Shown in pieces: positions 23,065-49,730 of a DNA stretch of 64,000 nt (its first letter is position 1; each line of letters opens with the position of its first letter). The position numbers and the translations under genes were made by a program. Source of the DNA: Piromyces finnis finn (lineage: Eukaryota; Fungi; Neocallimastigomycota); assembly GCA_002104945.1 (NCBI GenBank), contig MCFH01000005.1, positions 434,001 to 498,000 of the forward strand, written 5' to 3'. The notes beneath the pieces are model-generated. The model saw only the letters and a program-made list of their open reading frames with translations, was not told the origin of the DNA and searched no databases.

Positions 23065-23318
23065 TTTTTTTTTTTTTTTTTTTTTTTTTTTAACGGCATC
23101 AAATATTTTAAACTTTATTAAAATTATAATACATGTAATATAAAAATTAAAAAATAAAATAAAAATAAAAAAATATGTTTAAATAAGCACAAATGAATAA
23201 AAATTGGGTATAATGTATTCTAGTAATTTTAATTAAAGTAAGAAAGCCACTATTATACTAAAGTATAATAATTGTATTTGACTTCCAATGGGACACAGAG
23301 CCAAAGATCAAAATTTTA

Positions 23319-26300: not shown

Positions 26301-27854
26301 TTCATCTGTAGAAACATTAGGATCGTTGAATTTTGCTGAAAGTATTTGGAATTTATTATGACTGAGAATAGATTCCTTTTCCTCAATACATTTTAATCTA
26401 TTCCATTTCAGAATTTTCTTAGGAACATTAAAGTCATTAGAAAAATCTTCCATAGGAATAATTTTACCATTAATAAGAAGTGGCTTATGGTCTGATACAG
26501 GATAAAAATTATTTATAAATGATCCTGAGTGAATAAGATCTTTCATCTTCGAATTGATAAGAGCATGGTCAATGTCGGAAGATTGATCACCTCGAGTCCA
26601 AGAGATAGTAGACCCTCTAAGCGGAAGAATTTCCCAATCTCCTAATCCATTAGTTGATAACCAGTTGGATAATTTTACTTTAGACATATTAAAATCACCA
26701 ACAAGAATCGATGGATGGGATGAATGAGTTTGTAACCACAAGCGAACTTCTAACTTTGCATGATCAACATAGATGTTGTGATGACTATGAGGCATATAAA
26801 CATTTCCAATCGAGCATTTGAATCTATTCCAGAGACTAAAAGTATAAATAGAAATAATATACTTTCCAGAGAAGTTTTCAAGTGAGGCTTGACACGAATT
26901 GTGAAAACCTAAATATAAACCTCTCATTCCCGGAACTGATTCGTCAGCTTTCTTGAAAAAGTGTCTATAGTTTCGCAAAGTAACACGACAAGGATAATCT
27001 GTATTCGATCCAGAACCATTACCAGTTTCTTGGAAACATAAGAATAATGGTTTGAAAATAGCTGTGAAATAGCTAATACTATCTCTCTTTTCATGATTCC
27101 ACCCATTGGTGTTCCAACTAAGACAAAAAGAAAAGTTATCAGGCTTGTTGGATGAGGAAGAATCGTTGCTATTATTATTATTATTAAAGTCATCGTTATT
27201 AATGGATGATGCATCAGAGGAATAAGTAGAACTATTACTAGATGGCTGTGAAACTGAAGAACTATCAACTATTGAACTGTTATCAGAGTTGATAGAACTA
27301 TTAGAATTAATTGTTGAATGTTGAGATTGAAATTGTGTTTGCTGTAGATCTGGAATATTTTCATGATGGGAAACTTGTTGAAGATCCTGTTGAAGATCTT
27401 GTTGAAGATCGGATTGTTGATGAGATTGTTGAACTGATTGTTGAACTGATTGTTGAAATGATTGTTGAATAGAATGTTGATGTTTATTAGAAACTAAAAT
27501 TTTACGTTTGAGAGTGGAAAAAGTGTATTTGTGATTCCTTCTACTACGAGCTGAAAAGGAAATTGAGGTAACTGAAAGTTTCTTCTTTAACATGTGTAAG
27601 ATTTTAATACAATCTTTTGATGAACCATGAACCTTGACTAAGAAAAAGTGATCATTGAAAGTTTGAAAATATTTAACACTAATAACTGAATTAAATTTAT
27701 CTTCTAGAATAACCTCGAGTTTTTCCCATAGCATATTTACTGACCATGATCGAATACCACGGATAAAGAAGGAGCGAATATCATCTAAGGGGATACCATA
27801 AGACCGGGTACCACGTCTGATATAATTCTTATCTTTAATATAAAGGACTGACAT
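23319..27854 (-). CDS. LINE polyprotein, 1511 aa: N-terminal domain, Q/S/N-rich linker, AP endonuclease, reverse transcriptase, CCHC-type zinc knuckle, Asn-rich tract
   Basis: APE motifs SWNTNG, FQET, GDFN, SDIDH, SDHKP. RT motifs GPDGIP, NYRGISL, QFGFR, DLRKAYDSV, RQGCPLSP, LFADD, YLGV. Knuckle CPCC..HWLLDC. The ORF is uninterrupted. Confidence 0.97.
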   Translation of the reverse strand: MSVLYIKDKNYIRRGTRSYGIPLDDIRSFFIRGIRSWSVNMLWEKLEVILEDKFNSVISVKYFQTFNDHFFLVKVHGSSKDCIKILHMLKKKLSVTSISFSARSRRNHKYTFSTLKRKILVSNKHQHSIQQSFQQSVQQSVQQSHQQSDLQQDLQQDLQQVSHHENIPDLQQTQFQSQHSTINSNSSINSDNSSIVDSSSVSQPSSNSSTYSSDASSINNDDFNNNNNSNDSSSSNKPDNFSFCLSWNTNGWNHEKRDSISYFTAIFKPLFLCFQETGNGSGSNTDYPCRVTLRNYRHFFKKADESVPGMRGLYLGFHNSCQASLENFSGKYIISIYTFSLWNRFKCSIGNVYMPHSHHNIYVDHAKLEVRLWLQTHSSHPSILVGDFNMSKVKLSNWLSTNGLGDWEILPLRGSTISWTRGDQSSDIDHALINSKMKDLIHSGSFINNFYPVSDHKPLLINGKIIPMEDFSNDFNVPKKILKWNRLKCIEEKESILSHNKFQILSAKFNDPNVSTDELSKEFTSTAFSIADELSITSANNVIKSSFHISQQIFNLQKIKMKLYKRFKKERIYDIDEFIKRIKIYRKLIDYIHKRCNEFRKQEYLHWIKTECEYMKSHNPKKAWKWIKKTAKIGKDSFFIAQPIKNKNGELVVATEEQLEVWHDHFEKLASDPSGVSLDLEHWYEEPTNKRFSLPMLDEWDINQDISIDEVKSAILSTPNYKASGPDGIPIEFYKALIPSSNDSNNVTDNNSSGNTTSDNDAYGLNFILKLFNRIWDGDFPNSWNESSIVSIPKKGDLTDCDNYRGISLINNGIKLISKIVTTRISEYGLKNNFIRPEQFGFRKKEESISLFISIQEICRRRQLDNKETYLAFLDLRKAYDSVPIGNILHKLDCLGIRGKSLQFIKNLYLTSKANVKLDGQFSKSFDVKKGVRQGCPLSPILFNLFINDIFKECEDLGVSLGDTRCCGGLFADDIVICAPTRGCLKKMLRRVNEWALYNEMEFGIQKCSTMVIRPESIENQNKRDPTFYLAGKPIPTTDCYTYLGVPFDKNLSLKPVIKTLNNKVLKGLFSVSKFLRNPNIPIPFKKLVLNSQVISRVSYFAPLLGSNKARSRIAQKHVNKGIRWVTGVHKAVSFISLYSISKDLNIPPLSAKCALAQVRCFNKWKNSNCIISHLVNYIPKFRKYTWCKSSRTLDKKLKKHGDIKAVKNFYWKDLKGNSIKAQYYDDNKFIETKDFIKLCYEYPEFASGFYWLLKARSGYKLDARVAKAAKFVDPVCPNYCPCCKCGVQSIKHWLLDCPTFRDIRIKHYDSIVQLLNFFSQRNSNSPINNNEIDNISRDSNNINSNSNNSSNNNSNSNNSNSNNSNNNNNRNNNISNDSNSEDNNSNLDSNLVNNSNSSNNLVNINVYNYSSVCSKIFKFLLGGRNFNNINYNSREWKELCKHQIQSGTNEGTPFLKVTAELLTKIMPFAIGQQWSMFKRFEATSKSVNAEETVRHVRRASATNGDHNFVP

Positions 27855-28050
27855 GATAATAAATTCTAATTAAAAAATATTGAATATAAAATAAATACTA
27901 ATAAAAATTACAAATATAACGTATATGGAAAAAAATCTGTCTCTCTCTCTCTTCTTAAAAGTACTGGATAGTACAAAAATTGTTACGATGCTTTGTTTAA
28001 AGTTTCTTTTTTTTTTTTTGAATTCTAGTTGTAAATTTTCTTTAAAAATT

Positions 28051-28391
28051 CTAGTTTTGGTTTGTTGTTAGTAAATTCGATTCGCTTTTTGACACTAAAC
28101 TTGTTTGACTTTACTTTTCATTAAATATTTAAATTGGTAAAAAATTTGAATCAAGAATGTCGACACCAGAAAGCTTGTGAATAGTATTTTTACATGATGT
28201 AGAGTGAATCAGTCTCTTACAAGAAACAATACAACAATAGCTACATGAATATAAAAGTACAATGCAAATGCTAAAGTTGACTACATTGGATTCTTACAAG
28301 AGAAGAGTAGTACTACATGAATACATGAATAAAAGAAAAAATACAGCAACAAAATGTATTACTCTTCTAATTAAATACTATACAAACTTAC
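28051..28391 (-). other. Putative spliceosomal intron in the family-A LINE 5' UTR
   Basis: Sense-strand donor CAG/GTAAGT starts at 28391, branch point TACTAAC is at 28073-28067, and acceptor TAG ends at 28051. The same signals occur in A2, A3 and A4. Confidence 0.55.
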
Positions 28392-28504
28392 CTGAAAAAT
28401 CAAACATTCACTTATTCATCAAATACTTAAATTTGATGAATAAAATGTTTTTTAATCGCTCAGTACCATGAGCTTAGTCCTAATAATTTTCCCTTGAAGA
28501 CTAA

Positions 28505-28750
28505 CCAAGCATCCATTGCGCAATGCTTGGATTTAATTCTTTCTACTCTCTCAGTACCATGAGCATGAGTAGACCCCCTTGAGAAATTACATTTATTAAA
28601 TAAATGAAGGCACATTCCTAAGAGGGCACCAAGCATCCATTGCGCAATACTTGGATTTAATTCTTTCTACTCTCTCAGTACCATGAGCATGAGTAGACCC
28701 CCTTGAGAAACTACATTTATTAAATAAATGAAGGCACGTTCCCAAGAGGG
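28505..28750 (-). repeat. Two 124-bp tandem 5' monomers of LINE A1
   Basis: Units start ccaagcatccattgcgcaat at 28505 and 28629. Confidence 0.95.
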
Positions 28751-29358
28751 TTCACAAGAGGGTAATATAAAAAAAAACTCTCATTTCGGGAACTGATTCA
28801 TCAGCTTTCTTGAAAAAGAGTCACGTTCCCAAGGGGATCCTTTTACTCAAACGGGTTTTTAAATAATTTTTCATCAAAAAAAAAAAAAAAATAAATAAAT
28901 TACATACATTTGAAAAATAAATTTAATCAAACACAAATTAAATATATTGAAATATTATACTATAGTAATTTTATACTATTTTCCATTATACATAATTAAA
29001 TAATGAAAAAATATTAATATCTTTTTTACATATTTAAATTACTATATTATAACACTGAAAAGCTAATAATAAAACAAATTTTAATATTTTATTTTTAATA
29101 TACTTTTATTTTTTAATTTATATTTATTTATTTGTTTTTTATTATTTCATTTCATATTTATGATTTATTCTTATGAATTTTTATTTTTTTTAAAATTAAA
29201 CTCTAATACCAATAACAAAAACCTTTTTTTAATTTTTTATTTTATTCAATTATTATTTATTTTTCTTTTGAATGTCTTTTATAGTAATTATTACTTTTTA
29301 ATTAACTTTTAATTTATTTTATAAAATTTTATTTATATAAAGTCTCATATTAAATAAC

Positions 29359-33215: not shown

Positions 33216-33840
33216 TTTTTTTATGGCAGCTATTTTAAAATATTTATTATAACAAAAAACTATAATACATCTATTTAAAAATAAATTTATAAATTAAAAA
33301 AAAATAAAATAAAATAATTAAACAACACAAATGAATAAAAAATGGATGTAATATATTCTAGTAATTCCATAAATTAAATTTTAATATAGGAAAGAAAGTC
33401 ACTATTATACATGAGTATAATAATTATGTTTTGACATCCAATGGGACTCAGCCTCACAAATTTTGGTGGACAAAATTATTATCTATTAGTTGTGTATTGA
33501 TTTAATATTTTTCTATTGTTTCTTTAATATTGGTGCTCTTAATTGTTTTAACCCTTTTAAGCATTGATTTTTGCTTCCCAATAGCATAAGGCATTATTAT
33601 GGTTAGATTCATATGTACTTTGTTTAGTTTGACAACTTAAAAGACCTCACCATTTTCTTATTGTATCATTATTTTTAAAACTTCTTCTCCCAATCAGGAA
33701 TTTAAATATTTTTTATATAGGTAATATATATTAATGTCCATAGAATTATTAAAACTATCATTAACTAAACTATTTAAACTATAGGAATTGTTTAAATTTA
33801 AAGAATTAGAATAATCATCTTTATTATTGCTATTATTATT

Positions 33841-34505: not shown

Positions 34506-37143
34506 AGAAAACGGTTTTAAAATCATTATGTCTTTTCAATATATTTAAATAAATAAAAGGGATTACGTTTAGTGTGATAGATTTGTATAATAAAGAGTTT
34601 TACTAAAAGCATATTAAATAAGATAAAATAGTAAAATTTTATTTTTCTAAAAATTGAAAGGTTAACTTTTCTATATAACTGATTTTTTTATTGATTGTTT
34701 TCTGATTCCTATATCTGATATTAAACCACAATGGTTAATACCAATTTTAAAAGAGTTATAAAATATATTTAATATTTTTTTCTAATAATAAAATGTCCAT
34801 TACTAATTTTTCCCTTACATCAATACCACATTTTGTAAATTTAAAAAGTAATTAATAAATTATGAAACTATGTACAAGAAATTTTTTTTATTTAATGTAT
34901 ATAATAAAAAATGAGTAATTTAAAATTAAATAAATAATAACGATATAATATATTATAGTAATTATATTTTTTTAGATAAACAAAAAAAAGTATATGGGTC
35001 GAAAAAAATAACATATATAAATTAGTTTTTGAGCTTCTGCCCTTGATAAATTTTTATGATATAAATTAATTAATTACTGTATTCTTTATTATTATAAAAA
35101 ACAAAAATATTCTGTTAAATTATTAGAAAAAGTATAATATGAAATTTTATTTATCACATTTTTAGAAATAATTTTAAGAATAAATTTTATGAGTGATATT
35201 CTATTATAGTAATTAAAATCTTAAATATTACATTTTTTTTGAGATTGAAATAATAGAAGCGAAGTTTCAAAGGAAAAAAACTAAATACTTATATAAAACA
35301 TATTTTTGCTAAATTAAAAATTAAAAAAAAAAACTTTACGTCTTATAATAATTAAAGTATATTAATTATATTTAATAAAAATTGCTTATTAATAAATGAA
35401 CTATCTCTATTTCATAAATAACTTAATATTCACTCACATTTTATTGATACAATAAAATATTAACTAATAATTAAAAATTATTCAAAAAATATACATGGTA
35501 TATTATTATGGTAAATAAATACATATTTATTTAAAAATATGTTAATTTAAATAATATTTTATAATTTATTACATTAAAAAAAATAAAAAAAAGTTTTAAA
35601 ATATTTAATAATAATCATTAAGAAATTATATATAATGTTTTAACTATAAAAAAAAAGTTTCTTTATCTAATACGATTTAAATATATAAATTTATCTATAT
35701 GTATTTTTTATTTGTACATTTATTTTATATTTATAATAACATTCACATTATTAAATATTTAAATATTTATTATATTTATTAAATTTAATTTACCTAGTAC
35801 TATATATTTTATTAACCTTTTCTACATTTGTCCCTGTTATGTATCTCGCATTATATGATAAAATAGACAATTTACTTGGACCTCTATATTTTATTTCTTT
35901 CAAAATCTTTAGTGATTTCTTTTTTAAAGCTCATGCTAAAATTTATTTTTATTGGGGTTTTTCTTGAATCATATTACCATTAGCGCTTTTATTATCACTT
36001 TTATTATTATTTTCTTTCTTTTTTTTATTATCATAATCTAATAAATTTTAATAATTCTTTAAATAATGTGTCACTATTATAAATATATTCATCTAATACT
36101 TTAATTTCACCTTTATTGCATCAATAAAATTCAAAAGAATTGTTTCTGACTTTTGACACAATACATGATAGACCAGTATTTATTCATAATAATTTAAAAT
36201 TTTAATATAATATATATATATATTGCATCTTTTGCAACTCTAGCATCCAACTTGTATCCGCTTCTTGCTTTCAATAGCCAGTAGAAACCAGAGGCAAACT
36301 CTGGGTATTCATAACATAATTTAATAAAATCTTTAGTTTCAATAAATTTATTATCATCATAATATTGCGCTTTGATTGAATTCCCTTTGAGATCTTTCCA
36401 ATAAAAGTTTTTAACTGCTTTAATATCTCCATGTTTCTTTAGTTTTTTATCAAGTGTCCTACTTGATTTGCACCACGTGTATTTTCTAAATTTAGGAATG
36501 TAATTGACAAGGTGTGAGATAATACAATTTGAGTTTTTCCATTTGTTAAAACATCTAACCTGAGCTAACGCACATTTGGCTGACAATGGAGGAATATTCA
36601 AATCTTTTGAGATAGAGTATAAAGATATAAACGATACAGCTTTATGAACTCCGGTAACCCATCGTATTCCTTTGTTAACATGTTTCTGAGCAATCCTAGA
36701 CCTAGCTTTGTTGGATCCAAGTAATGGTGCAAAGTATGAAACTCTGCTAATCACTTGTGAGTTAAGTACTAACTTTTTGAAGGGAATAGGAATATTAGGA
36801 TTTCTTAAGAATTTACTGACTTAAAAAAGTCCTTTCAAAACTTTGTTATTAAGAGTTTTAATAACTGGTTTAAGGGACAGATTCTTATCAAATGGAACAC
36901 CAAGATAAGTATAACAATCAGTAGTTGGAATGGGTTTTCCTGCTAAGTAAAATGTTGGATCTCTCTTGTTCTGATTTTCTATTGATTCAGGACGAATCAC
37001 CATCGTTGAACATTTCTGGATACCAAATTCCATTTCATTATACAAAGCCCATTCATTAACTCTTCTAAGCATCTTTTTTAAGCATCCTCTTGTTGGAGCA
37101 CAAATAACTATATCATCTGCAAAAAGTCCACCACAGCATCGAG

Positions 37144-37691
37144 TTTTTTTTTTTTAACTTCCGAGTGTATTTCTCCCATCGATCAGAGTTAGCTCCAATG
37201 GTGGTTCTTAGAGAAACGTTGGCTCATTCCTATTGCTAGGTGGTTGTGACCCTCTTGGTCTGTCATACTGTTTCTTCAGCTTCGACTCTCACTTAATCCA
37301 TGTACATTAGATGCATGTCGTTGTACGATATTTCACAACTATAATGCTAAGCCTCTTATAGTCAATTTGATCACGTGTCAACCGCCCCCTAATGTTTACA
37401 CTTAAATTGATTAAGGAATATTATGTGTTTTTGGCATAGCCTAAGTCACCACTTATTAAGTTCTAATTTGGAATGTACCATGTACACTAGACCCTCTCAG
37501 GCCGGCTAGACGAGTGTTATTATCATAGTAGTAAATTAGAAAGTTCATTTATACTTACCTGAATATCATAACCCAACCCATGGCAAACCCAGTGGGAAAA
37601 TCCACAGGCACTGACATCTGCGGGGTCGAACCAGAAGCCTTATGTATGCTAAGGAAACGCCTTAACAACCAGGATAAAAACTGGAACGACT
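37144..37691 (-). mobile_element. Candidate tRNA-derived SINE (about 548 bp) with poly(A) tail, LINE-like 3' segment and 11-13-bp TSD
   Basis: T run from 37144. TSD acagcatcgag at 37133-37143 and 37692-37702. The 5' head has cttagcat and B box GGTTCGACCCC. 37250-37290 matches the LINE-A ORF end (43631-43671) at 35/41. Confidence 0.8.
37612..37689 (-). other. Decayed tRNA-Ala(AGC)-like head of the SINE (not a functional tRNA)
   Basis: Sense strand ..tggttgttaaggcgtttccTTAGCATacataaggcttctGGTTCGACCCCgcag retains the anticodon loop, variable loop and T loop of eukaryotic tRNA-Ala, but the stems no longer pair. Confidence 0.65.
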
Positions 37692-40600
37692 ACAGCATCG
37701 AGTGTCACCTAAACTGACTCCGAGATCTTCGCACTCTTTAAATATATCATTAATAAAGAGATTAAAAAGAATAGGAGAAAGAGGGCATCCTTGACGGACT
37801 CCTTTCTTCACATCAAAAGATTTCGAGAATTGTCCATCTAATTTGACATTAGCCTTAGATGTTAAATATAAATTTTTGATAAATTGTAAACTCTTACCTC
37901 GGATTCCTAAACAATCTAATTTATGGAGAATATTACCGATTGGGACTGAATCGTATGCTTTCCTGAGATTTAAAAAGGCCAAATATGTCTCTTTATTATC
38001 TAATTGACGTCTACGGCATATTTCTTGGATTGAAATGAAAAGACTGATACTTTCTTCCTTTTTTCGAAAACCAAATTGTTCAGGTCTAATGAAATTATTC
38101 TTTAGACCATATTCTGAGATTCTAGTGGTGACAATTTTGGAAATCAACTTAATACTATTATTGATAAGTGATATACCTCGATAGTTATCACAATCTGTCA
38201 AATCTCCCTTCTTAGGAATAGAAACAATACTGGATTCATTCCATGAGTTGGGGAAGTCTCCATCCCAAATACGGTTGAATAATTTAAGAATAAAATTTAA
38301 ACCATGAGCATCATTATCTGAAGTGGTATTACCAGAAGAATTATTATCTGTAACATTATTAGAATCATTACTTGATGGAATTAATGCTTTGTAAAATTCA
38401 ATTGGAATACCATCTGGACCTGATGCTTTATAATTTGGAGTAGAGAGGATAGCTGACTTGACTTCATCAATACTAATATCTTGGTTGATATCCCACTCAT
38501 CAAGCATAGGAAGTTAAAAACATTTATTCGTTGGTTCTTCATACCAATGCTCCAAATCAAGACTTACACCACTTGGATCTGATGCAAGCTTTTCGAAATG
38601 ATCATGCCACACTTCTAGTTGTTCTTCCATAGCAACAACTAATTCTCCATTTTTATTTTTAATTGGTTGAGCAATAAAGAAAGAATCTTTTCCAATTTTT
38701 GCAGTTTTCTTGATCCATTTCCAGGCCTTCTTAGGATTATGACTCTTCATATACTCACATCCTGTTTTAATCCAATGAAGATATTCTTGTTTCCTAAATT
38801 CATTACATCTTTTGTGGATGTAATCAATGAGCTTACGGTAGATTTTAATTAGTTTAATAAATTCATCTATATCATAAATTCTTTCTTTTTTAAATCTCTT
38901 ATACAACTTCATTTTGATTTTTTGAAGATTAAAAATTTGTTGTGAAATATGAAATGAAGACTTTATAACATTATTTGATGAGGTAATATTGAGCTCGTCT
39001 GCAATTGAAAAAGCAGTTGAAGTAAACTCTTTGGAAAGTTCATCTGTAGAAACATTAGGATCGTTGAATTTTGCTGAAAGTATTTGGAATTTATTATAAT
39101 TGAGAATAGATTCCTTTTCCTCAATACATTTTAATCTATTCCATTTCAGAATTTTCTTAGGAACATTAAAGTCATTAGAAAAATCTTCCATAGGAATAAT
39201 TTTACCATTAATAAGAAGTGGCTTATGGTCTGATACAGGATAAAAATTATTTATAAATGATCCTGAGTGAATAAGATCTTTCATCTTCGAATTGATAAGA
39301 GCATGGTCAATGTCGGAAGATTGATCACCTCGAGTCCAAGAGATAGTCGACCCTCTAAGCGGAAGAATTTCCCAGTCTCCTAATCCATTAGTTGATAACC
39401 AGTTGGATAATTTTACTTTAGACATATTAAAATCACCAACAAGAATCGATGGATGGGATGAATGAGTTTGTAACCACAAGCGAACTTCTAACTTTGCATG
39501 ATCAACATAGATGTTGTGATGACTATGAGGCATATAAACATTTCCAATCGAGCATTTGAATCTATTCCAGAGACTAAAAGTATAAATAGAAATAATATAC
39601 TTTCCAGAGAAGTTTTCAAGTGAGGCTTGACACGAATTGTGAAAACCTAAATATAAACCTCTCATTCCAGGAACTGATTCATCAGCTTTCTTGAAAAAGT
39701 GTCTATAGTTTCGCAAAGTAACACGACAAGGATAATCTGTATTCGATCCAGAACCATTACCAGTTTCTTGGAAACATAAAAATAATGGTTTGAAAATAGC
39801 TGTGAAATAGCTAATACTATCTCTCTTTTCGTGATTCCACCCATTGGTGTTCCAACTAAGACAAAAAGAAAAGTTATCAGGCTTGTTGGATGAGGAAGAA
39901 TCGTTGCTATTATTATTATTATTAAAGTCATCGTTATTAATGGATGATGCATCAGAGGAATAAGTAGAACTATTACTAGATGGCTGTGAAACTGAAGAAC
40001 TATCAACTATTGAACTGTTATCAGAGTTGATAGAACTATTAGAATTAATTGTTGAATGTTGAGATTGAAATTGTGTTTGCTGTAGATCTGGAATATTTTC
40101 ATGATGGGAAACTTGTTGAAGATCTTGTTGAAGATCTTATTGAAGATCGGATTGTTGATGAGATTGTTGAACTGATTGTTGAACTGATTGTTGAATAGAA
40201 TGTTGATGTTTATTAGAAACTAAAATTTTACGTTTGAGTGTGGAAAAAGTGTATTTGTGATTCCTTCTACTACGAGCTGAAAAGGAAATTGAGGTAACTG
40301 AAAGTTTCTTCTTTAACATGTGTAAGATTTTAATACAATCTTTCGATGAACCATGAACCTTGACTAAGAAAAAGTGATCATTGAAAGTCTGAAAATATTT
40401 AACACTAATAACTGAATTAAATTTATCTTCTAGAATAACCTCGAGTTTTTCCCATAGCATATTTACTGACCATGATCGAATACCACGGATAAAGAAGGAG
40501 CGAATATCATCTAAGGGGATACCATAAGACCGGGTACCACGTCTGATATAATTCTTATCTTTAATATAAAGGACTGACATGATAATTAATTCTAATTAAA

Positions 40601-41301
40601 AATATTGAATATAAAATAAATACTAATAAAAATTAAAAATATAACGTATATGGAAAAAAATCTGTCTCTCTCTCTCTTCTTAAAAGTACTGGATAGTACA
40701 AAAATTGTTACGATGCTTTGTTTAAAGTTTCTTTTTTTTTTTTTTTTTTTTTGAATTCTAGTTGTAAATTTACTTTAAAAATTCTAGTTTTGGTTTGTTG
40801 TTAGTAAATTCGATTCGCTTTTTGACACTAAACTTGTTTGACTTTACTTTTCATTAAATATTTAAATTGGTAAAAAATTTGAATCAAGAATGTCGACACC
40901 AGAAAGCTTGTGAATAGTATTTTTACATGATGTAGAGTGAATCAGTCTCTTACAAGAAACAATACAACAATAGCTACATGAATATAAAAATACAATGCAA
41001 ATGCTAAAGTTGACTACATTGGATTCTTACAAGAGAAGAGTAATACTACATGAATACATGAATAAAAGAAAAAATACAGCAACAAAATGTATTACTCTTC
41101 TAATTAAATACTATACAAACTTACCTGAATATCAAACATTCAACTTATTCATCAAATACTTAAATTCGATGAATAAAATGTTTTTTAATCGCTCAGTACC
41201 ATGAGCTTAGTCCTAATAATTTTCCCTTAAAGACTAACCAAGCATCCATTGCGCAATACTTGGATTTAATTCTTTCTACTCTCTCAGTACCATGAGCATG
41301 A

Positions 41302-41304
<3 letters not shown>

Positions 41305-41342
<38 letters not shown>

Positions 41343-43314
41343 GGCATCAAATATTTTAAACTTTATTATTAATTTAATTAAAATTATAATACATGTAATA
41401 AAAAATTAAAAATAAATAAAAATAAAAAAAATATGTTTAAATAAACACAAATGAATAAAAATTGGGTATAATGTATTCTAGTAATTTTAATTAAAGTAAG
41501 AAAGCCACTATCATACTAAAGTATAATAATTGTATTTGACTTCCAATGGGACACCGAGCCAAAGATCAAAATTTTGTCATGGAACAAAATTATGATCTCC
41601 ATTGGTTGCGCTGGCCCTCCTGGCCTGTCTTACTGTTTCTTCAGCATTGACGCTCTTGGATGTTGCTTCAAACCTTTTGAACATTGACCATTGCTGGCCA
41701 ATAGCAAAAGGCATGATTTTGGTTAGAAGTTCCGCTGTTACCGTCAAGAATGGTGTTCCTTCATTAGTACCAGATTGAATCTGACGCCTACAAAGTTCTT
41801 TCCATTCCCTTGAATTGTAATTAATATTGTTAAAACTTCTTCCCCCAAGAAGGAATTTAAATATTTTACTGCACACACTAGAATAATCATACACGTTAAT
41901 ATTCACCGGATTATTAGAACTATTACTATCATTAACTAAATTACTATCTAAAATAGAATTATTATCTTCACTATTGCTATCATTACTAATATTATTATTT
42001 CTATTATTGTTATTATTACTATTGTTACTATTACTATTGTTACTATTACTATTGTTATTACTACTATTGTTACTATTACTATTAATGTTATTACTATCTC
42101 TACTGATATTATCAATTTCATTATTATTGATAGGACTATTGGAATTACGTTGACTGAAAAAATTTAATAGCTGGACTATGGAATCATAATGTTTAATACG
42201 GATATCTCTAAATGTTGGACAATCTAATAACCAATGTTTAATACTTTGATCTCCACACTTGCAACATGGACAGTAGTTAGGACAAACTGGATCAACAAAT
42301 TTAGCAGCTTTGGCAACTCTAGCATCCAACTTATATCCGCTTCTTGCTTTCAATAGCCAGTAGAAGCCATAGGCAAACTCTGGGTACTCATAACAATCTT
42401 CTAGAATAACCTCGAGTTTTTCCCATAGCATATTTACTGACCATGATCGAATACCACGGATAAAGAAGGAGCGAATATCATCTAAGGGGATACCATAAGA
42501 CCGGGTACCACGTCTGATATAATTCTTATCTTTAATATAAAGGACTGACATGATAATTAATTCTAATTAAAAAAAATTGAATATAAAATAAATACTAATA
42601 AAAAATATAAATATAACGTATATGGAAAAAAATCTGTCTCTCTCTCTCTTCTTAAAAGTACTGGATAGTACAAAAATTGTTACGATGCTTTGTTTAAAGT
42701 TTCTTTTTTTTTTTTTTTTTTTTTTTGAATTCTAGTTGTAAATTTTCTTTAAAAATTCTAGTTTTGGTTTGTTGTTAGTAAATTCGATTCGCTTTTTGAC
42801 ACTAAAATTGTTTGACTTTACTTTTCATTAAATATTTAAATTGGTAAAAAATTTGAATCAAGAATGTCGACACCAGAAAGCTTGTGAATAGCATTTTTAC
42901 ATGATGTAGAGTGAATCAGTCTCTTACAAGAAACAATACAACAATAGCTACATGAATATAAAAATACAATGCAAATGCTAAAGTTGACTACATTGGATTC
43001 TTACAAGAGAAGAGTAGTACTACATGAATACATGAATAAAAGAAAAAAATACAGCAACAAAATGTATTACTCTTCTAATTAAATACTATACAAACTTACC
43101 TGAATATCAAACATTCAACTTATTCATCAAATACTTAAATTCGATGAATAAAATGTTTTTTAATCGCTCAGTACCATGAGCTTAGTCCTAATAATTTTCC
43201 CTTAAAGACTAACCAAGCATCCATTGCGCAATGCTTGGATTTAATTCTTTCTACTCTCTCAGTACCATGAGCATGAGTAGACCCCCTTGAGAAACTACAT
43301 TTATTAAATAAATG

Positions 43315-43316
<2 letters not shown>
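41305..43316 (-). mobile_element. Internally deleted family-A LINE (A3) with 35-nt poly(A), both UTRs and an in-frame fused 324-aa ORF (41577-42551)
   Basis: The junction KLEVILED/CYEYPEF at about 42386 removes EN and RT. Its 5' repeat appears to resume at 49099, after A4. Confidence 0.93.
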
Positions 43317-43356
<40 letters not shown>

Positions 43357-46300
43357 GGCATCAAATATTTTAAACTTTATTATTAATTTAATTAAAATTA
43401 TAATACATGTAATAAAAAATTAAAAATAAAAATAAAAATAAAAAAAATATGTTTAAATAAACACAAATGAATAAAAACTGGGTATAATGTATTCTAGTAA
43501 TTTTAATTAAAGTAAGAAAGCCACTATCATACTAAAGTATAATAATTGTATTTGACTTCCAATGGGACACCGAGCCAAAGATCAAAATTTTATCATGGGA
43601 CAAAATTATGATCTCCATTGGTTGCGCTGGCCCTCCTGGCCTGTCTTACTGTTTCTTCAGCATTGACGCTCTTGGATGTTGCTTCAAACCTTTTGAACAT
43701 TGACCATTGCTGGCCAATAGCAAAAGGCATGATTTTGGTTAGAAGTTCCGCGGTTACCGTCAAGAATGGTGCTCCTTCATTAGTACCAGATTGAATCTGA
43801 CGCTTACAAAGTTCTTTCCATTCCCTTGAATTGTAATTAATATTGTTAAAACTTCTTCCCCCAAGAAGGAATTTAAATATTTTACTGCACACACTAGAAT
43901 AATCATACACATTAATATTCACCGGATTATTAGAACTATTACTATCATTAACTAAATTACTATCTAAATTAGAATTATTATCTTCACTATTGCTATCATT
44001 ATTAATATTATTATTTCTATTACTACTATTGTTATTATTACTATTTCTATTATTACTATTACTACTATTGTAATTATTACTATTGTTATTATTATTATTG
44101 TTACTATTACTATTACTGTTATTGCTATCTCTACTGACATTATCAATTTCATTATTATTGATAGGACTATTGGAATTACGTTGACTGAAAAAATTTAATA
44201 GCTGGACTATGGAATCATAATGTTTAATACGGATATCTCTAAATGTTGGACAATCTAATAACCAATGTTTAATACTTTGAACACCACACTTGCAACATGG
44301 ACAGTAGTTAGGACAAATTGGATCAACAAATTTAGCAGCTTTGGCAACTCTAGCATCCAACTTGTATCCGCTTCTTGCTTTCAATAGCCAGTAGAAGCCA
44401 TAGGCAAACTCTGGGTATTCATAACATAATTTAATAAAATCTTTAGTTTCAATAAATTTATTATCATCATAATATTGCGCTTTGATTGAATTCCCTTTGA
44501 GATCTTTCCAATAAAAGTTTTTAACTGCTTTAACATCTCCATGTTTCTTTAGTTTTTTATCAAGTGTCCTACTTGATTTGCACCACGTGTATTTTCTAAA
44601 TTTAGGAATGTAATTGACAAGGTGTGAGATAATACAATTTGAGTTTTTCCATTTGTTAAAACATCTAACCTGAGCTAACGCACATTTGGCTGACAATGGA
44701 GGAATATTCAAATCTTTTGAAATAGAGTATAAAGATATAAACGATACAGCTTTATGAACTCCGGCAACCCATCGTATTCCTTTGTTAACATGCTTCTGAG
44801 CAATCCTAGACCTGGCTTTGTTGGATCCAAGTAATGGTGCAAAGTATGAAACTCTGCTAATCACTTGAGAGTTAAGTACTAGTTTTTTGAAAGGAATAGG
44901 AATATTAGGATTTCTTAAGAATTTACTGACTGAGAAAAGCCCTTTCAAAACCTTGTTATTAAGAACTTTAATTACTGGTTTAAGGGACAGATTCTTATCA
45001 AATGGAACACCAAGATAAGTGTAGCAGTCAGTAGTTGGAATGGGTTGTCCTGCTAAGTAAAATGTTGGATCTCTCTTGTTCTGATTTTCTATTGATTCAG
45101 GACGAATCACCATCGTTGAACATTTCTGGATACCAAATTCCATTTCATTATACAAGGCCCATTCATTAACTCTTCTAAGCATCTTTTTTAAGCATCCTCT
45201 TGTTGGAGCACAAATAACTATATCATCTGCAAAAAGTCCACCACAGCATCGAGTGTCACCTAAACTGACTCCGAGATCTTCACACTCTTTAAATATATCA
45301 TTAATAAAGAGATTAAAAAGAATAGGCGAAAGTGGGCAACCTTGACGGACTCCTTTCTTCACATCAAAAGATTTCGAGAATTGTCCATCTAATTTGACAT
45401 TAGCCTTAGATGTTAAATATAAATTTTTGATAAATTGTAGACTCTTACCTCGGATTCCTAAACAATCTAATTTATGGAGAATATTACCGATTGGGACTGA
45501 ATCGTATGCTTTCCTGAGATCTAAAAAGGCCAAATATGTCTCTTTATTATCTAATTGACGTCTACGGCATATTTCTTGGATTGAAATGAAAAGACTAATA
45601 CTTTCTTCCTTTTTTCGAAAACCAAATTGTTCAGGTCTAATGAAATTATTCTTTAAACCATATTCTGAGATTCTAGTGGTGACAATTTTGGAAATCAACT
45701 TAATACCATTATTGATAAGTGATATACCTCGATAGTTATCACAATCTGTCAAATCTCCCTTCTTAGGAATAGAAACAATACTGGATTCATTCCATGAGTT
45801 GGGGAAATCTCCATCCCAAATACGGTTGAATAATTTAAGAATAAAATTTAAACCATGAGCATCATTATCTGAAGTAGTATTACCAGAAGAATTATTATCT
45901 GTAGCATTATTAGAATCATTACTTGATGGAACTAATGCTTTGTAAAATTCAATTGGAATACCATCCGGACCTGATGCTTTATAATTTGGAGTAGTGAGGA
46001 TAGCTGACTTGACTTCATCAATACTAATATCTTGGTTGATATCCCACTCATCAAGCATAGGAAGTGAAAAACGTTTATTCGTTGGTTCTTCATACCAATG
46101 CTCCAAATCAAGACTTACACCACTTGGATCTGATGCAAGATTTTCGAAATGATCATGCCACACATCTAGTTGTTCTTCCGTAGCAACAACTAATTCTCCA
46201 TTTTTATTTTTAATTGGTTGAGCAATAAAGAAGGAATCTTTTCCAATTTTTGCAGTTTTCTTGATCCATTTCCAGGCCTTCTTAGGATTATGACTCTTCA

Positions 46301-49084
46301 TATACTCACATCCTGTTTTAATCCAATGAAGATATTCTTGCTTCCTAAATTCATTACATCTTTTGTGGATGTAATCAATGAGTTTACGGTAGATTTTAAT
46401 TCTTTTAATAAATTCATCTATATCATAAATTCTTTCTTTTTTAAATCTCTTATACAACTTCATTTTGATTTTTTGAAGATTAAAAATTTGTTGTGAAATA
46501 TGAAATGAAGACTTTATAACATTATTTGCTGAAGTAATACTGAGCTCGTCTGCAATTGAAAAAGCAGTTGAAGTAAACTCTTTGGAAAGTTCATCTGTAG
46601 AAACATTAGGATCGCTGGATTTTGCTGAAAGTATTTGGAATTTATTATGACTGAGAATAGATTCCTTTTCCTCAATACATTTTAATCTATTCCATTTCAG
46701 AATTTTCTTAGGAACATTAAAGTCATTAGAAAAATCATCCATAGGAATAATTTTACCATTAATAAGAAGTGGCTTATGGTCTGATACAGGATAAAAATTA
46801 TTTATAAATGATCCTGAGTGAATAAGATCTTTCATCTTCGAATTGATAAGAGCATGGTCAATGTCGGAAGATTGATCACCTCGAGTCCAAGAGATAGTAG
46901 ACCCTCTAAGCGGAAGAATTTCCCAATCTCCTAATCCATTAGTTGATAACCAGTTGGATAATTTTACTTTAGACATATTAAAATCACCAACAAGAATCGA
47001 TGGATGGGATGAATGAGTTTGTAACCACAAGCGAACTTCTAACTTTGCATGATCAACATAGATGTTGTGATGACTATGAGGCATATAAACATTACCAATC
47101 GAGCATTTGAATCTATTCCAGAGACTAAAAGTATAAATAGAAATAATATACTTTCCAGAGAAGTTTTCAAGTGAGGCTTGACACGAATTGTGAAAACCTA
47201 AATATAAACCTCTCATTCCCGGAACTGATTCGTCAGCTTTCTTGAAAAAGTGTCTATAGTTTCGCAAAGTAACACGACAAGGATAATCTGTATTCGATCC
47301 AGAACCATTACCAGTTTCTTGGAAACATAAAAATAATGGTTTGAAAATAGCTGTGAAATAGCTAATACTATCTCTCTTTTCGTGATTCCACCCATTGGTG
47401 TTCCAACTAAGACAAAAAGAAAAGCTATCAGGCTTGTTGGATGAGGAAGAATCGTTGCTATTATTATTATTATTAAAGTCATCGTTATTAATGGATGATG
47501 CATCAGAGGAATAAGTAGAACTATTACTAGATGGCTGTGAAACTGAAGAACTATCAACTATTGAACTGTTATCAGAGTTGATAGAGCTATTAGAATTAAT
47601 TGTTGAATGTTGAGATTGAAATTGTGTTTGCTGTAGATCTGGAATATTTTCATGATGGGAAACTTGTTGAAGATCCTGTTGAAGATCTTGTTGAAGATCG
47701 GATTGTTGATGAGATTGTTGAACTGATTGTTGAAATGATTGTTGAATAGAATGTTGATGTTTATTAGAAACTAAAATTTTACGTTTGAGAGTGGAAAAAG
47801 TGTATTTGTGATTCCTTCTACTACGAGCTGAAAAGGAAATTGAGGTAACTGAAAGTTTCTTCTTTAACATGTGTAAGATTTTAATACAATCTTTTGATGA
47901 ACCATGAACCTTGACTAAGAAAAAGTGATCATTGAAAGTTTGAAAATATTTAACACTAATAACTGAATTAAATTTATCTTCTAGAATAACCTCGAGTTTT
48001 TCCCATAGCATATTTACTGACCATGATCGAATACCACGGATAAAGAAGGAGCGAATATCATCTAAGGGGATACCATAAGACCGGGTACCACGTCTGATAT
48101 AATTCTTATCTTTAATATAAAGGACTGACATGATAATAAATTCTAATTAAAAAATATTGAATATAAAATAAATACTAATAAAAATTACAAATATAACGTA
48201 TATGGAAAAAAATCTGTCTCTCTCTCTCTTCTTAAAAGTACTGGATAGTACAAAAATTGTTACGATGCTTTGTTTAAAGTTTCTTTTTTTTTTTTTGAAT
48301 TCTAGTTGTAAATTTTCTTTAAAAATTCTAGTTTTGGTTTGTTGTTAGTAAATTCGATTCGCTTTTTGACACTAAACTTGTTTGACTTTACTTTTCATTA
48401 AATATTTAAATTGGTAAAAAATTTGAATCAAGAATGTCGACACCAGAAAGCTTGTGAATAGTATTTTTACATGATGTAGAGTGAATCAGTCTCTTACAAG
48501 AAACAATACAACAATAGCTACATGAATATAAAAGTACAATGCAAATGCTAAAGTTGACTACATTGGATTCTTACAAGAGAAGAGTAGTACTACATGAATA
48601 CATGAATAAAAGAAAAAATACAGCAACAAAATGTATTACTCTTCTAATTAAATACTATACAAACTTACCTGAAAAATCAAACATTCACTTATTCATCAAA
48701 TACTTAAATTTGATGAATAAAATGTTTTTTAATCGCTCAGTACCATGAGCTTAGTCCTAATAATTTTCCCTTGAAGACTAACCAAGCATCCATTGCGCAA
48801 TGCTTGGATTTAATTCTTTCTACTCTCTCAGTACCATGAGCATGAGTAGACCCCCTTGAGAAATTACATTTATTAAATAAATGAAGGCACATTCCTAAGA
48901 GGGCACCAAGCATCCATTGCGCAATACTTGGATTTAATTCTTTCTATTCTCTCAGTACCATGAGCATGAGTAGACCCCCTTGAAGGCACATTCCTAAGAG
49001 GGCACCAAGCATCCATTGCGCAATACTTGGATTTAATTCTTTCTACTCTCTCAGTACCATGAGCATGAGTAGACCCCCTTGAGA
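43317..49084 (-). mobile_element. Full-length intact family-A LINE (A4) inserted into the 5' monomer of A3, 14-bp TSD
   Basis: 37-nt T run at 43317-43353, ORF 43593-48131, and attaaataaatgaa at 43303-43316 and 49085-49098. Confidence 0.93.
43593..48131 (-). CDS. LINE polyprotein, 1512 aa (APE-RT-zinc knuckle), uninterrupted
   Basis: Same motifs as 23319-27854 with scattered substitutions and small in-frame indels in the low-complexity tracts. Confidence 0.97.
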   Translation of the reverse strand: MSVLYIKDKNYIRRGTRSYGIPLDDIRSFFIRGIRSWSVNMLWEKLEVILEDKFNSVISVKYFQTFNDHFFLVKVHGSSKDCIKILHMLKKKLSVTSISFSARSRRNHKYTFSTLKRKILVSNKHQHSIQQSFQQSVQQSHQQSDLQQDLQQDLQQVSHHENIPDLQQTQFQSQHSTINSNSSINSDNSSIVDSSSVSQPSSNSSTYSSDASSINNDDFNNNNNSNDSSSSNKPDSFSFCLSWNTNGWNHEKRDSISYFTAIFKPLFLCFQETGNGSGSNTDYPCRVTLRNYRHFFKKADESVPGMRGLYLGFHNSCQASLENFSGKYIISIYTFSLWNRFKCSIGNVYMPHSHHNIYVDHAKLEVRLWLQTHSSHPSILVGDFNMSKVKLSNWLSTNGLGDWEILPLRGSTISWTRGDQSSDIDHALINSKMKDLIHSGSFINNFYPVSDHKPLLINGKIIPMDDFSNDFNVPKKILKWNRLKCIEEKESILSHNKFQILSAKSSDPNVSTDELSKEFTSTAFSIADELSITSANNVIKSSFHISQQIFNLQKIKMKLYKRFKKERIYDIDEFIKRIKIYRKLIDYIHKRCNEFRKQEYLHWIKTGCEYMKSHNPKKAWKWIKKTAKIGKDSFFIAQPIKNKNGELVVATEEQLDVWHDHFENLASDPSGVSLDLEHWYEEPTNKRFSLPMLDEWDINQDISIDEVKSAILTTPNYKASGPDGIPIEFYKALVPSSNDSNNATDNNSSGNTTSDNDAHGLNFILKLFNRIWDGDFPNSWNESSIVSIPKKGDLTDCDNYRGISLINNGIKLISKIVTTRISEYGLKNNFIRPEQFGFRKKEESISLFISIQEICRRRQLDNKETYLAFLDLRKAYDSVPIGNILHKLDCLGIRGKSLQFIKNLYLTSKANVKLDGQFSKSFDVKKGVRQGCPLSPILFNLFINDIFKECEDLGVSLGDTRCCGGLFADDIVICAPTRGCLKKMLRRVNEWALYNEMEFGIQKCSTMVIRPESIENQNKRDPTFYLAGQPIPTTDCYTYLGVPFDKNLSLKPVIKVLNNKVLKGLFSVSKFLRNPNIPIPFKKLVLNSQVISRVSYFAPLLGSNKARSRIAQKHVNKGIRWVAGVHKAVSFISLYSISKDLNIPPLSAKCALAQVRCFNKWKNSNCIISHLVNYIPKFRKYTWCKSSRTLDKKLKKHGDVKAVKNFYWKDLKGNSIKAQYYDDNKFIETKDFIKLCYEYPEFAYGFYWLLKARSGYKLDARVAKAAKFVDPICPNYCPCCKCGVQSIKHWLLDCPTFRDIRIKHYDSIVQLLNFFSQRNSNSPINNNEIDNVSRDSNNSNSNSNNNNNNNSNNYNSSNSNNRNSNNNNSSNRNNNINNDSNSEDNNSNLDSNLVNDSNSSNNPVNINVYDYSSVCSKIFKFLLGGRSFNNINYNSREWKELCKRQIQSGTNEGAPFLTVTAELLTKIMPFAIGQQWSMFKRFEATSKSVNAEETVRQARRASATNGDHNFVP

Positions 49085-49187
49085 ATTAAATAAATGAAGG
49101 CACGTTCCCAAGAGGTAAGGCACGTTCCTAAGAGGACACCAAGCATCCATTGCGCAATACTTGGATTTAATTCTTTCTACTCTCTCA
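48782..49187 (-). repeat. Four 5' monomers (124, 99, 134 and partial 49 bp)
   Basis: Units start ccaagcatccattgcgcaat at 48782, 48906, 49005 and 49139. Confidence 0.95.
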
Positions 49188-49274
49188 ATTGGGTATAATG
49201 TATTCTAGTAGTTTTAATTAAAGTAAGAAAGCCACTATTATACTAAAGTATAATAATTGTATTTGACTTCCAAT
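49188..49274 (-). mobile_element. Isolated 87-bp fragment of the family-A 3' UTR at the outer 5' junction of array 2
   Basis: attgggtataatg..gacttccaat matches about 23203-23289. Confidence 0.88.
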
Positions 49275-49730
49275 ATTTTCTTTTAAATCATTCCTTTATT
49301 ATTGCTATTATTATTAATATTAAAGTTATAATTAGTTTCTTTTTACCTTTGCCATCTTAATTTTTACCAATAAAATTTTAAAAATATATAATTTTTCAAT
49401 TAAATAATGGTTAAAAATAATTTACTTAATATTATATATAAATCTTTAACAATATAAATATTTCCTTAATTTTTCTACTCCTTTTATCAAAATAAAAATA
49501 ATTTAATTTAAAAATGATTTTTTCATGCCTTTAATTTATAATTAATACTTTATTTATTTGTTCTTTATTAATTTTTTTTCTTATTTTAAATTATATTTTT
49601 TACTTATATTTTTTTTATTTATTAATTTTATGTTTCAATATATACATAACATTATTTGTTAAATTCAAATAATTTTATTATATATATATTATTATATACA
49701 TATATTATGTATTATTGTTTTCTATCTCAT

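What the first reader, a model, noticed from the sequence alone, without database searches (positions are those of the whole stretch)
36225..49274. Array 2: self-targeting LINE, with TSD evidence of insertion into its own 5' monomer
Seen: A2 (nonsense mutations, SINE), A3 (deleted) and A4 (intact) are joined head-to-tail, each poly(A) landing inside the previous copy's monomer (after gagcatgagta at 41304 and after aaataaatgaa at 43316). The 14-mer attaaataaatgaa recurs at 49085-49098 at an otherwise anomalous deletion in the monomer series. The sequence after it (ggcacgttcccaagagg) is the variant that follows the gagaaactac allele found in A3, as seen in the second monomer of A1. So A4 inserted into A3's repeat with a normal-length TSD. 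Overall 4 of 5 family-A tails abut this motif; the oldest remnant at 33216 does not. Inference: a LINE that carries its own landing pad, using resident copies as a safe haven and possibly inheriting extra upstream monomers with each round. No TSD is visible for the A3/A2 junction.
Basis: partly seen in the sequence, partly recalled or inferred. Interest (0 to 1): 0.9.

Follow-up and report, generated by a model that had tools for sequence, protein, structure and literature searches.

The report
LINE copies nested in own repeats
Three copies of an abundant jumping gene (an L1-like LINE) of the gut fungus Piromyces finnis sit head-to-tail because new copies landed inside the short repeat at the front of older copies. 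This is a real but non-exclusive preference of a kind already known from the LINEs Zepp and Cnl1.

Summary
On the minus strand, A2 (36225-41304; three in-frame stops, a 544-bp retroposon, 3' end missing), A3 (41305-43316; 3.5-kb internal deletion) and A4 (43317-49084; intact 1512-aa APE+RT ORF) lie head-to-tail. Each poly(A) abuts the 124-bp 5' monomer of the next copy, at the coordinates given.

The 14-mer at 43303-43316 recurs at 49085-49098 and is followed by the terminal-type monomer end.

Contigs of the source DNA run show the same two monomer positions next to canonical LINE 5' termini at many other loci.

The 'landing pad' idea is only partly supported. In about 99 kb of P. finnis DNA fetched without regard to LINEs, 3 of 3 family copies sit at ordinary sites, two of them with 12-13-bp TSDs. 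Nesting is therefore a preference, roughly 5% of full-length copies on a crude estimate.

The two 'motif' junctions of Array 1 are broken 5' regions of other LINE families with no TSD. RT template jumping is not excluded for them or for A3/A2.

Self-nesting in tandem orientation is published for Zepp and Cnl1. This scan had already found the same behaviour on other pieces of this genome.

Verdict: real, a new variant of a known kind, moderate interest.

The parts
36225..37144 (-). A2, 3' portion (equivalent to A4 44335-45254). The last ~1 kb and the tail are missing; homology stops at an (AT)n tract.
   Evidence: one in-frame stop
37145..37688 (-). 544-bp poly(A)-tailed retroposon (SINE-like) inserted in A2's RT region in the same orientation. 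TSD is c[c/t]acagcatcgag, 11-13 bp.
   Evidence: ARAGORN finds no tRNA in the window
37689..41304 (-). A2, 5' portion with two in-frame stops. Its first monomer (41237-41304) is cut after ...catgagcatgagta.
41305..43316 (-). A3: T35 tail (41305-39), 3' 1.1 kb (to 42395), then 5' 0.9 kb (42396-43316), with a 3.5-kb internal deletion. Its single monomer (43212-43316) is cut after ...aaataaatgaa.
43303..43316 (.). TSD copy 1 (attaaataaatgaa), the last 14 bp of A3's monomer before A4's tail
43317..49084 (-). A4: T37 tail, 3' UTR, intact ORF 43593-48131 (1512 aa; APE-type endonuclease, RT, weak zf-RVT), 650-bp 5' UTR, and monomers 48781-48904 (124 bp), 48905-49003 (99-bp variant) and 49004-49084 (cut at ...cttgaga).
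49085..49098 (.). TSD copy 2 (attaaataaatgaa)
   Evidence: Contigs of the source DNA run join canonical 5' termini to exactly 49085/49086 at other loci (table 5c).
49099..49115 (-). Rest of A3's monomer (ggcacgttcccaagagg), the terminal-type end. It reaches the canonical 5' terminus of the family.
49116..49118 (.). 3-nt filler (taa) between A3's 5' terminus and the next piece
   Evidence: inference
49119..49187 (-). End of one monomer plus 51 bp of the next. It starts exactly at the ...atgaa|ggcac position. I read it as the rest of A2's monomers, which makes the A3 insertion a 38-40-bp target deletion. Alternatively it is the rest of an older resident copy.
   Evidence: inference
49187..49274 (-). 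88-bp internal piece of the family's 3' UTR (equivalent to A4 43476-43563), same orientation, between the monomer stack and unique flank. Origin unresolved.

Best explanation
Array 2 is a stack built by successive target-primed reverse transcription events of one abundant, single-ORF, L1-like LINE of Piromyces finnis (window = MCFH01000005.1:434001-498000). Each newcomer inserted, in the same orientation, into the 124-bp 5' monomer of the copy already there.

Shown:
- A4 entered A3's only monomer at ...AAATAAATGAA|GGCAC (written on the nicked, antisense strand) and made a 14-bp TSD.
- The two halves of A3's monomer reassemble into a normal terminal-type monomer.

Inferred:
- A3 entered A2's first monomer at ...CATGAGCATGAGTA|. 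It lost the 38-40 bp up to the other hot spot, so no TSD was made.
- A2's 3' end and whatever lay beyond it were later deleted.

The family prefers these two positions but does not require them. Both lie at the 3' foot of small hairpins on the nicked strand. Most copies elsewhere use ordinary AT-rich sites with 12-13-bp TSDs.

The choice is most likely made when TPRT starts, through where the endonuclease nicks and/or which nicks can prime. Which of these applies is not shown.
For: Junctions and TSD strings.

Allele linkage: the C allele goes with the cgttccc end in terminal monomers of A1 and of the L051/L053 and L052 copies, and the T allele with cattcct in internal monomers.

Canonical 5' terminus...aagaggg in A1, L052 and L053. 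A3's remainder ends there.

Other loci: Logan contigs of the source DNA run join this terminus (+G) to 49085/49086 with depths 443, 323, 178, 162 and 148. They join it to 48836 (atgagcatgagta...) with depths 1221, 629 and 151. Unique flank depth is about 55-65. These are 5' junctions of the TSD type at the same two positions.

Enrichment: monomer-like DNA is 1.7% of the window, yet 4 of 5 tails lie in it, all in one orientation.

TSD length: the family's normal TSD is 12-13 bp. The retroposon in A2 has 11-13 bp.

Hairpins.
Against: - Only one of the four nested junctions in the window has a TSD.
- 0 of 3 copies in about 99 kb of unselected DNA are nested.
- A crude depth ratio suggests only about 5% of full-length copies are nested. 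The depths are summed k-mer depths, not copy numbers.
- Repeated joints could partly be one ancestral scar that was then copied by retrotransposition.
- The hexamer CATGAG is rare in this AT-rich DNA. 19 of 34 occurrences in the window are in monomer-like DNA, so a modest sequence bias could account for the CATGAG-containing hot spot (after ...gagta).
- The junctions could not be checked with long reads. The poly(T) runs exceed the 31-mers of the contigs.
- Divergence does not order the copies by age. A2 and A3 share 22 variants against A1=A4 in the last 870 bp.
Confidence: 0.62

Rival explanations
1. Template jumping. While copying one LINE RNA, the reverse transcriptase reached or fell off its 5' region and jumped onto the poly(A) end of a second LINE RNA. 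One insertion event then yields two head-to-tail copies with no TSD between them. This would apply to A3/A2 and to the Array 1 junctions (A1 on family D, the old remnant on family C), not to A4/A3.
For: - There is no TSD at 41304/5, 23064/5 or 17144/5.
- The expected remainder of the D element is not found beyond A1's 5' end. Instead 28751-28840 is an old LINE ORF fragment.
- The piece at 49119-49187 could belong to an older resident copy whose body was lost with the deletion at 36225.
- An 88-bp 3' UTR piece at 49187-49274 looks like a product of template switching.
Against: - None of the tails abuts the canonical 5' terminus ...aagaggg, which is where jumps from a full-length RNA should occur.
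- The A4/A3 junction has a TSD and both halves of the target.
- The genome-wide joints run terminus to 48836, which fits TSD-bearing insertions at the ...gagta site.
- An RNA contig of a D-like element continues past ...catgagc into ttagtcctaata, so D's RNA does not end there (tables 7 and 8).
Confidence: 0.17
2. Alternative parse of the 5' stack. A4 ends at the canonical terminus (49115) and merely carries a private 10-bp deletion in its last monomer. A3's monomer resumes at 49119 with no TSD.
For: All other full-length copies end at the canonical terminus. The piece at 49119 starts exactly at the nick position.
Against: - The deletion's right edge would coincide by chance with the position (49085/6) to which canonical termini are joined at other loci.
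- The remainder would be a hybrid cgttcct end that is not seen with the C allele in any canonical copy.
- A2's remainder would then be missing altogether.
Confidence: 0.1
3. No targeting. With thousands of copies, some insertions fall into monomers by chance or survive there because they do no harm. Local duplication made the array.
For: The family is very abundant. Summed depth is about 5x10^5 against about 60 for unique flank, and there are 9 copies in about 160 kb examined. Isolated copies at ordinary sites are common.
Against: - 4 of 5 tails fall in 1.7% of the window, all in one orientation.
- The two Array 2 junctions are at different monomer positions, so they are separate events.
- The same two positions recur at other loci.
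- Poly(A) tails at the junctions exclude simple unequal crossing-over.
Confidence: 0.06

Closest known systems
Cnl1 (Cryptococcus neoformans/deneoformans LINE)
   Same: [quoted passage not shown] TSDs are short or absent, and it can also insert elsewhere (PMC9942834; bioRxiv 10.1101/2021.08.11.455996).
   Different: Cnl1 arrays are subtelomeric and consist mostly of 5'-truncated copies. Here the array is interstitial (434-498 kb of a 1.37-Mb contig, next to cellulase genes), the hits are in a 124-bp 5' monomer at two defined positions, and the nested copies keep their 5' ends.
Zepp / Zepp-like L1 elements of green algae
   Same: [quoted passage not shown]
   Different: Zepp forms one cluster per chromosome (centromere or telomere), made mostly of 3' ends. 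It is not known to use a 5' monomer. Protein relatedness to Zepp was not tested here.
Telomere-targeted LINEs that carry target-like repeats at their 5' end (MoTeR of Magnaporthe; SART/TRAS, HeT-A/TART)
   Same: The concept is the same: each inserted copy brings a new target at its 5' end, so head-to-tail arrays grow (PMC7367193 holds the MoTeR description; the details here are from my own knowledge).
   Different: Their target is the host telomere repeat. MoTeRs use a restriction-enzyme-like endonuclease, and insertion is essentially site-restricted. Here the target is the element's own monomer, the endonuclease is APE-type and most copies are elsewhere.
Mouse L1 monomeric 5' UTR
   Same: Tandem monomers of about 100-200 bp at the 5' end of an L1-like element, in variable number (own knowledge).
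   Different: To my knowledge mouse L1 monomers are not reported as preferred insertion sites. Promoter activity of the fungal monomers is untested.

Membership tests
APE-type non-LTR retrotransposon (L1-like LINE) | Reverse transcriptase domain of the LINE type | tested here: met
   PF00078 E=1e-35. The best solved relative is human L1 ORF2p, E=1e-32.
APE-type non-LTR retrotransposon (L1-like LINE) | N-terminal apurinic-like endonuclease domain | tested here: inconclusive
   PF03372/PF14529 match with E about 2e-4 to 9e-4, below the Pfam cut-offs. Relatives carry PF03372. Catalytic residues were not checked.
APE-type non-LTR retrotransposon (L1-like LINE) | Poly(A) tail, variable 5' truncation, TSDs of about 10-15 bp | tested here: met
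   Tails of T27-T37, TSDs of 12, 13 and 14 bp, and a truncated copy in L050.
Self-nesting LINEs (Zepp / Cnl1 type) | New copies insert into resident copies of the same family in tandem orientation more often than chance | tested here: met
   4 of 5 tails lie in 1.7% of the window, all in the same orientation. There is a TSD at A4/A3 and recurrent joints at other loci. No genome-wide rate was measured.
Self-nesting LINEs (Zepp / Cnl1 type) | Arrays confined to telomeric, subtelomeric or centromeric regions | tested here: not met
   The array lies at about 470-483 kb of a 1.37-Mb contig between GH6/GH9 genes. Centromere status is unknown.
Strictly site-specific LINEs (R1/R2, Tx1-group, SART/TRAS type) | Nearly all copies at one target sequence | tested here: not met
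   3 of 3 copies in about 99 kb of unselected DNA are at unrelated sites, two of them AT-rich with TSDs.
LINEs with monomeric 5' UTR (mouse L1 type) | Tandem monomers at the 5' end that act as promoter | tested here: inconclusive
   Tandem 124-bp monomers are shown. Promoter activity and transcription start sites are not testable with these tools.

The most novel reading that the evidence does not exclude
The monomer is more than a passive target. One version is that its two hairpins create structure-specific nick sites at their 3' feet. Another is that transcripts of already-nested copies read through the tail into the next monomer. That read-through end would then anneal to monomers elsewhere and prime reverse transcription at the same nucleotide, giving a heritable, RNA-guided choice of site. 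Either way, each nested insertion leaves a short scar (TSD plus monomer end) that later transcripts can carry along. Self-insertion would then be the process that builds and remodels the monomer array; the 99-bp variant and the 10-bp gap would be such scars.
Probability: 0.15. Interest if true: 0.7.

Novelty: new variant of a known kind. Interest (0 to 1): 0.42.

Why it matters
No description of LINEs in anaerobic gut fungi turned up in the papers searched. Here one family appears to fill a sizeable share of the P. finnis genome and sits next to cellulase genes.

A LINE with defined, nucleotide-level hot spots in its own 5' repeat would allow two things. It would give a tractable case for asking how APE-type elements choose targets (sequence, DNA structure or RNA pairing). 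It would also suggest a route by which monomer arrays grow.

If the preference could be made strict, it would offer a harmless docking site in organisms that lack genetic tools.

As it stands, it extends a behaviour already described for Cnl1 and Zepp. It is not a new principle.

Tried and rejected
- Ribozyme or known RNA in the monomers: Rfam gave nothing at gathering threshold, and only chance-level hits at E about 8-9.
- tRNA gene as the real target (as for Dictyostelium TRE elements): no tRNA in the window.
- Metagenome scan for the family's 3' end: no match. A scan for the conserved palindrome core gave 45 loci, all chance matches.
- Relatives at 45-63% protein identity from rumen assemblies (L046-L049): no 124-bp monomers and no tail-to-monomer junctions.
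- Age ordering by private substitutions: not informative, because the differences mark subfamilies. A4's alleles are the minority type in the reads.
- My first idea that 28751-28836 is the rest of the D element's 5' region: rejected. It is homologous to the family's ORF at about 47173-47265.
- Search for a TSD of a putative older copy around the 88-bp piece: only chance 9-mers.
- Read-level check of the tail junctions: not possible. The runs are held as 31-mer contigs, which break at T35-T37, and only one read-laying run was allowed.

Full report
**What the window is**

The window has 16-33% GC. It encodes GH6 and GH9 cellulases with CBM10 dockerins. One of them is named Cel9A of Piromyces finnis at 100% identity. 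A fetched locus places the window at MCFH01000005.1:434001-498000 of GCA_002104945.1. The array is therefore interstitial in a 1.37-Mb contig.

**The element**

- Family A lies on the minus strand.
- It has a single 1512-aa ORF (43593-48131) with a sub-threshold APE-type endonuclease match, an RT domain and a faint zf-RVT match.
- Its closest solved relative is human L1 ORF2p.
- There is no ORF1 in the 650-bp 5' UTR.
- The 5' end carries 124-bp monomers.
- Three further copies were fetched from other contigs, and with A1 they define the canonical full-length form. That form has two monomers. The internal one is marked gagaaaTtac / ggcacAttccT. The terminal one is marked gagaaaCtac / ggcacGttccC. 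The element ends at ...aagaggg.

**Check of the observation**

A self-comparison and direct reading confirm every statement.

- A2 is 36225-41304. It has three in-frame stops. A 544-bp tailed retroposon sits at 37145-37688 with an 11-13-bp TSD. The last ~1 kb of A2 is absent.
- A3 is 41305-43316, with a 3.5-kb internal deletion.
- A4 is 43317-49084 and is intact.
- The tails (T35, T37) follow ...catgagcatgagta at 41304 and ...aaataaatgaa at 43316.
- The 14-mer is at 43303-43316 and at 49085-49098. There a monomer lacks 10 bp.
- Joining 43212-43316 to 49099-49115 gives a monomer that differs from A1's terminal monomer at one internal position, plus one difference at the base just past the terminus.
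- The C allele on the left and the cgttccc end on the right are both terminal-type markers. This pairing is seen in 3 of 3 full-length copies whose terminal monomer was read: A1, the L051/L053 copy and the L052 copy.

**Two ways to parse the 5' stack**

1. A4 truncated at 49084
2. the TSD
3. the rest of A3, up to the canonical terminus at 49115
4. taa
5. 49119-49187
6. an 88-bp 3' UTR piece

The alternative is that A4 ends canonically at 49115 and has a private 10-bp deletion. That alternative has three problems.

- It leaves the rest of A2 unaccounted for.
- It requires a hybrid monomer end that canonical copies do not show.
- It requires the deletion edge to coincide with a position that recurs at other loci.

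**Evidence from other loci**

I laid Logan contigs of the source DNA run on 48000-49500.

- The canonical terminus (up to 49115, plus G) is joined to 49085/49086 in five contig classes, with depths 443, 323, 178, 162 and 148.
- It is joined to 48836 (atgagcatgagta...) in three classes, with depths 1221, 629 and 151.
- A few other monomer positions are also seen.
- Unique flank depth is about 55-65.

These junctions have the form expected for full-length copies inserted at the two sites of this finding: 5' terminus, then TSD, then the rest of the monomer. The TSDs would be about 13-14 bp.

The depths are summed k-mer depths, not copy numbers. Identical junctions could also be one scar multiplied by later retrotransposition. 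The counts (roughly 60 junction equivalents) are therefore only indicative.

**The A3/A2 junction**

No TSD exists here. The piece after A3's terminus and the 3-nt filler starts exactly at ...atgaa|ggcac, the other hot spot. The simplest reading is one insertion that lost the 38-40 bp between the two sites.

An alternative is that A2's cDNA ended at ...gagta, the RT jumped to A3's RNA, and 49119-49187 belongs to an older resident copy. That resident's body would have been lost with the deletion at 36225. I cannot separate these two readings.

**How exclusive is the targeting?**

I fetched about 99 kb of P. finnis DNA around cellulase paralogs, chosen without regard to LINEs. It holds three family copies.

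- Two are full-length, with TSDs of 13 bp (ataaaaaaaacta) and 12 bp (ttaataattcgt) at AT-rich sites.
- One is truncated, and its tail is followed by unrelated sequence.
- None is in a monomer.

Taken with the joint depths, nesting concerns perhaps 5% of full-length copies. Monomers make up about 1-2% of the DNA, or half that per orientation. So there is a preference with sharp positional hot spots, not an obligatory landing pad.

**The '4 of 5' count**

The tails at 23065 and 17145 abut ...ctcagtaccatgagc and ...ctcagtatgag. These belong to LINEs that are only about 26-48% identical in protein.

A 23-bp block is 22/23 identical between family D and the A monomer, while the rest of D's 5' UTR is unrelated. 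An RNA contig of a D-like element continues beyond ...catgagc, so D is broken there.

The expected remainder of D is not found beyond A1. Instead 28751-28840 is an old LINE ORF fragment. These two junctions fit either insertion with target loss or template jumping.

**Possible basis of the preference**

- On the nicked strand, the monomer folds into hairpins (the RNA fold has z=-6.3).
- The nicks after ...gagta, ...tgagc (D), ...tgag (C) and ...aaatgaa all lie within 0-2 nt of the 3' foot of a hairpin.
- This regularity rests on two independent sites, so it is only suggestive.
- CATGAG is rare in this genome, and 19 of 34 copies in the window are in monomer-like DNA. A modest sequence bias would therefore also concentrate hits there. 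It does not explain the site after ...aaatgaa: only 5 of 67 aaatgaa copies are in monomers.

**Comparison with known systems**

- Zepp clusters arise from nested insertion that targets existing copies (PMC8226300, PMC3446292).
- Searches of the held literature found no description of LINEs in Neocallimastigomycota.
- Earlier notes of this scan report the same behaviour on other pieces of this genome. Two follow-ups reached a similar verdict.

**Verdict**

The TSD reading for A4/A3 is supported. Self-targeting is a real but partial preference. The 'safe haven' and 'monomer inheritance' ideas are untested. This is a new variant of a known kind and of moderate interest.

Noticed in passing
window 28751-28840: The DNA just beyond A1's canonical 5' terminus is an old, diverged fragment of a LINE ORF. 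It is homologous to A4 at about 47173-47265, in the same orientation, and is joined through a gagg(g) microhomology. So A1 (or an A1+D composite) sits inside yet another LINE remnant.
   Followed up: partly
window 27695-28571 vs 47976-48848, and 40425-41304 vs 42396-43279: A1 and A4, 20 kb apart, are identical over the last 872 bp of the 5' region. A2 and A3 share 22 variants against them. The A1/A4 alleles are the minority type in the reads. Possible causes are two subfamilies, local transposition or gene conversion.
   Followed up: partly
window 48905-49003: This 99-bp monomer variant lacks 25 bp. The right edge of the gap lies within about 1-3 nt of the ...atgaa|ggcac hot spot, and the left edge within 2 nt of A4's 5' end (...cttga). 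It could be the inherited scar of an older nested insertion.
   Followed up: no
window 49187-49274: An 88-bp internal piece of the family's 3' UTR sits between the monomer stack and unique flank, in sense orientation. It is either a relic of a short older copy or a product of 5' template switching.
   Followed up: partly
window 37145-37688: A 544-bp tailed retroposon sits in A2's RT region, in the same orientation as the LINE. Its 3' end shares only ttttaac with the LINE. ARAGORN finds no tRNA in it.
   Followed up: partly
window 48000-49274: Summed contig depth over LINE sequence is about 4-7x10^5, against about 60 for unique flank. There are 9 copies in about 160 kb examined. The family probably has thousands of copies and fills a sizeable share of the 56-Mb genome (genome size from my own knowledge).
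   Followed up: partly
L052 17893-18070: A full-length copy's tail is followed within about 40 bp by an old family 3' UTR in the opposite orientation (76-80% identity), a tail-to-tail pair.
   Followed up: no
window 36225 and 42395/42396: A2's truncation point (A4 equivalent 44335) and the left edge of A3's internal deletion (44426) lie only 91 bp apart in element coordinates.
   Followed up: no
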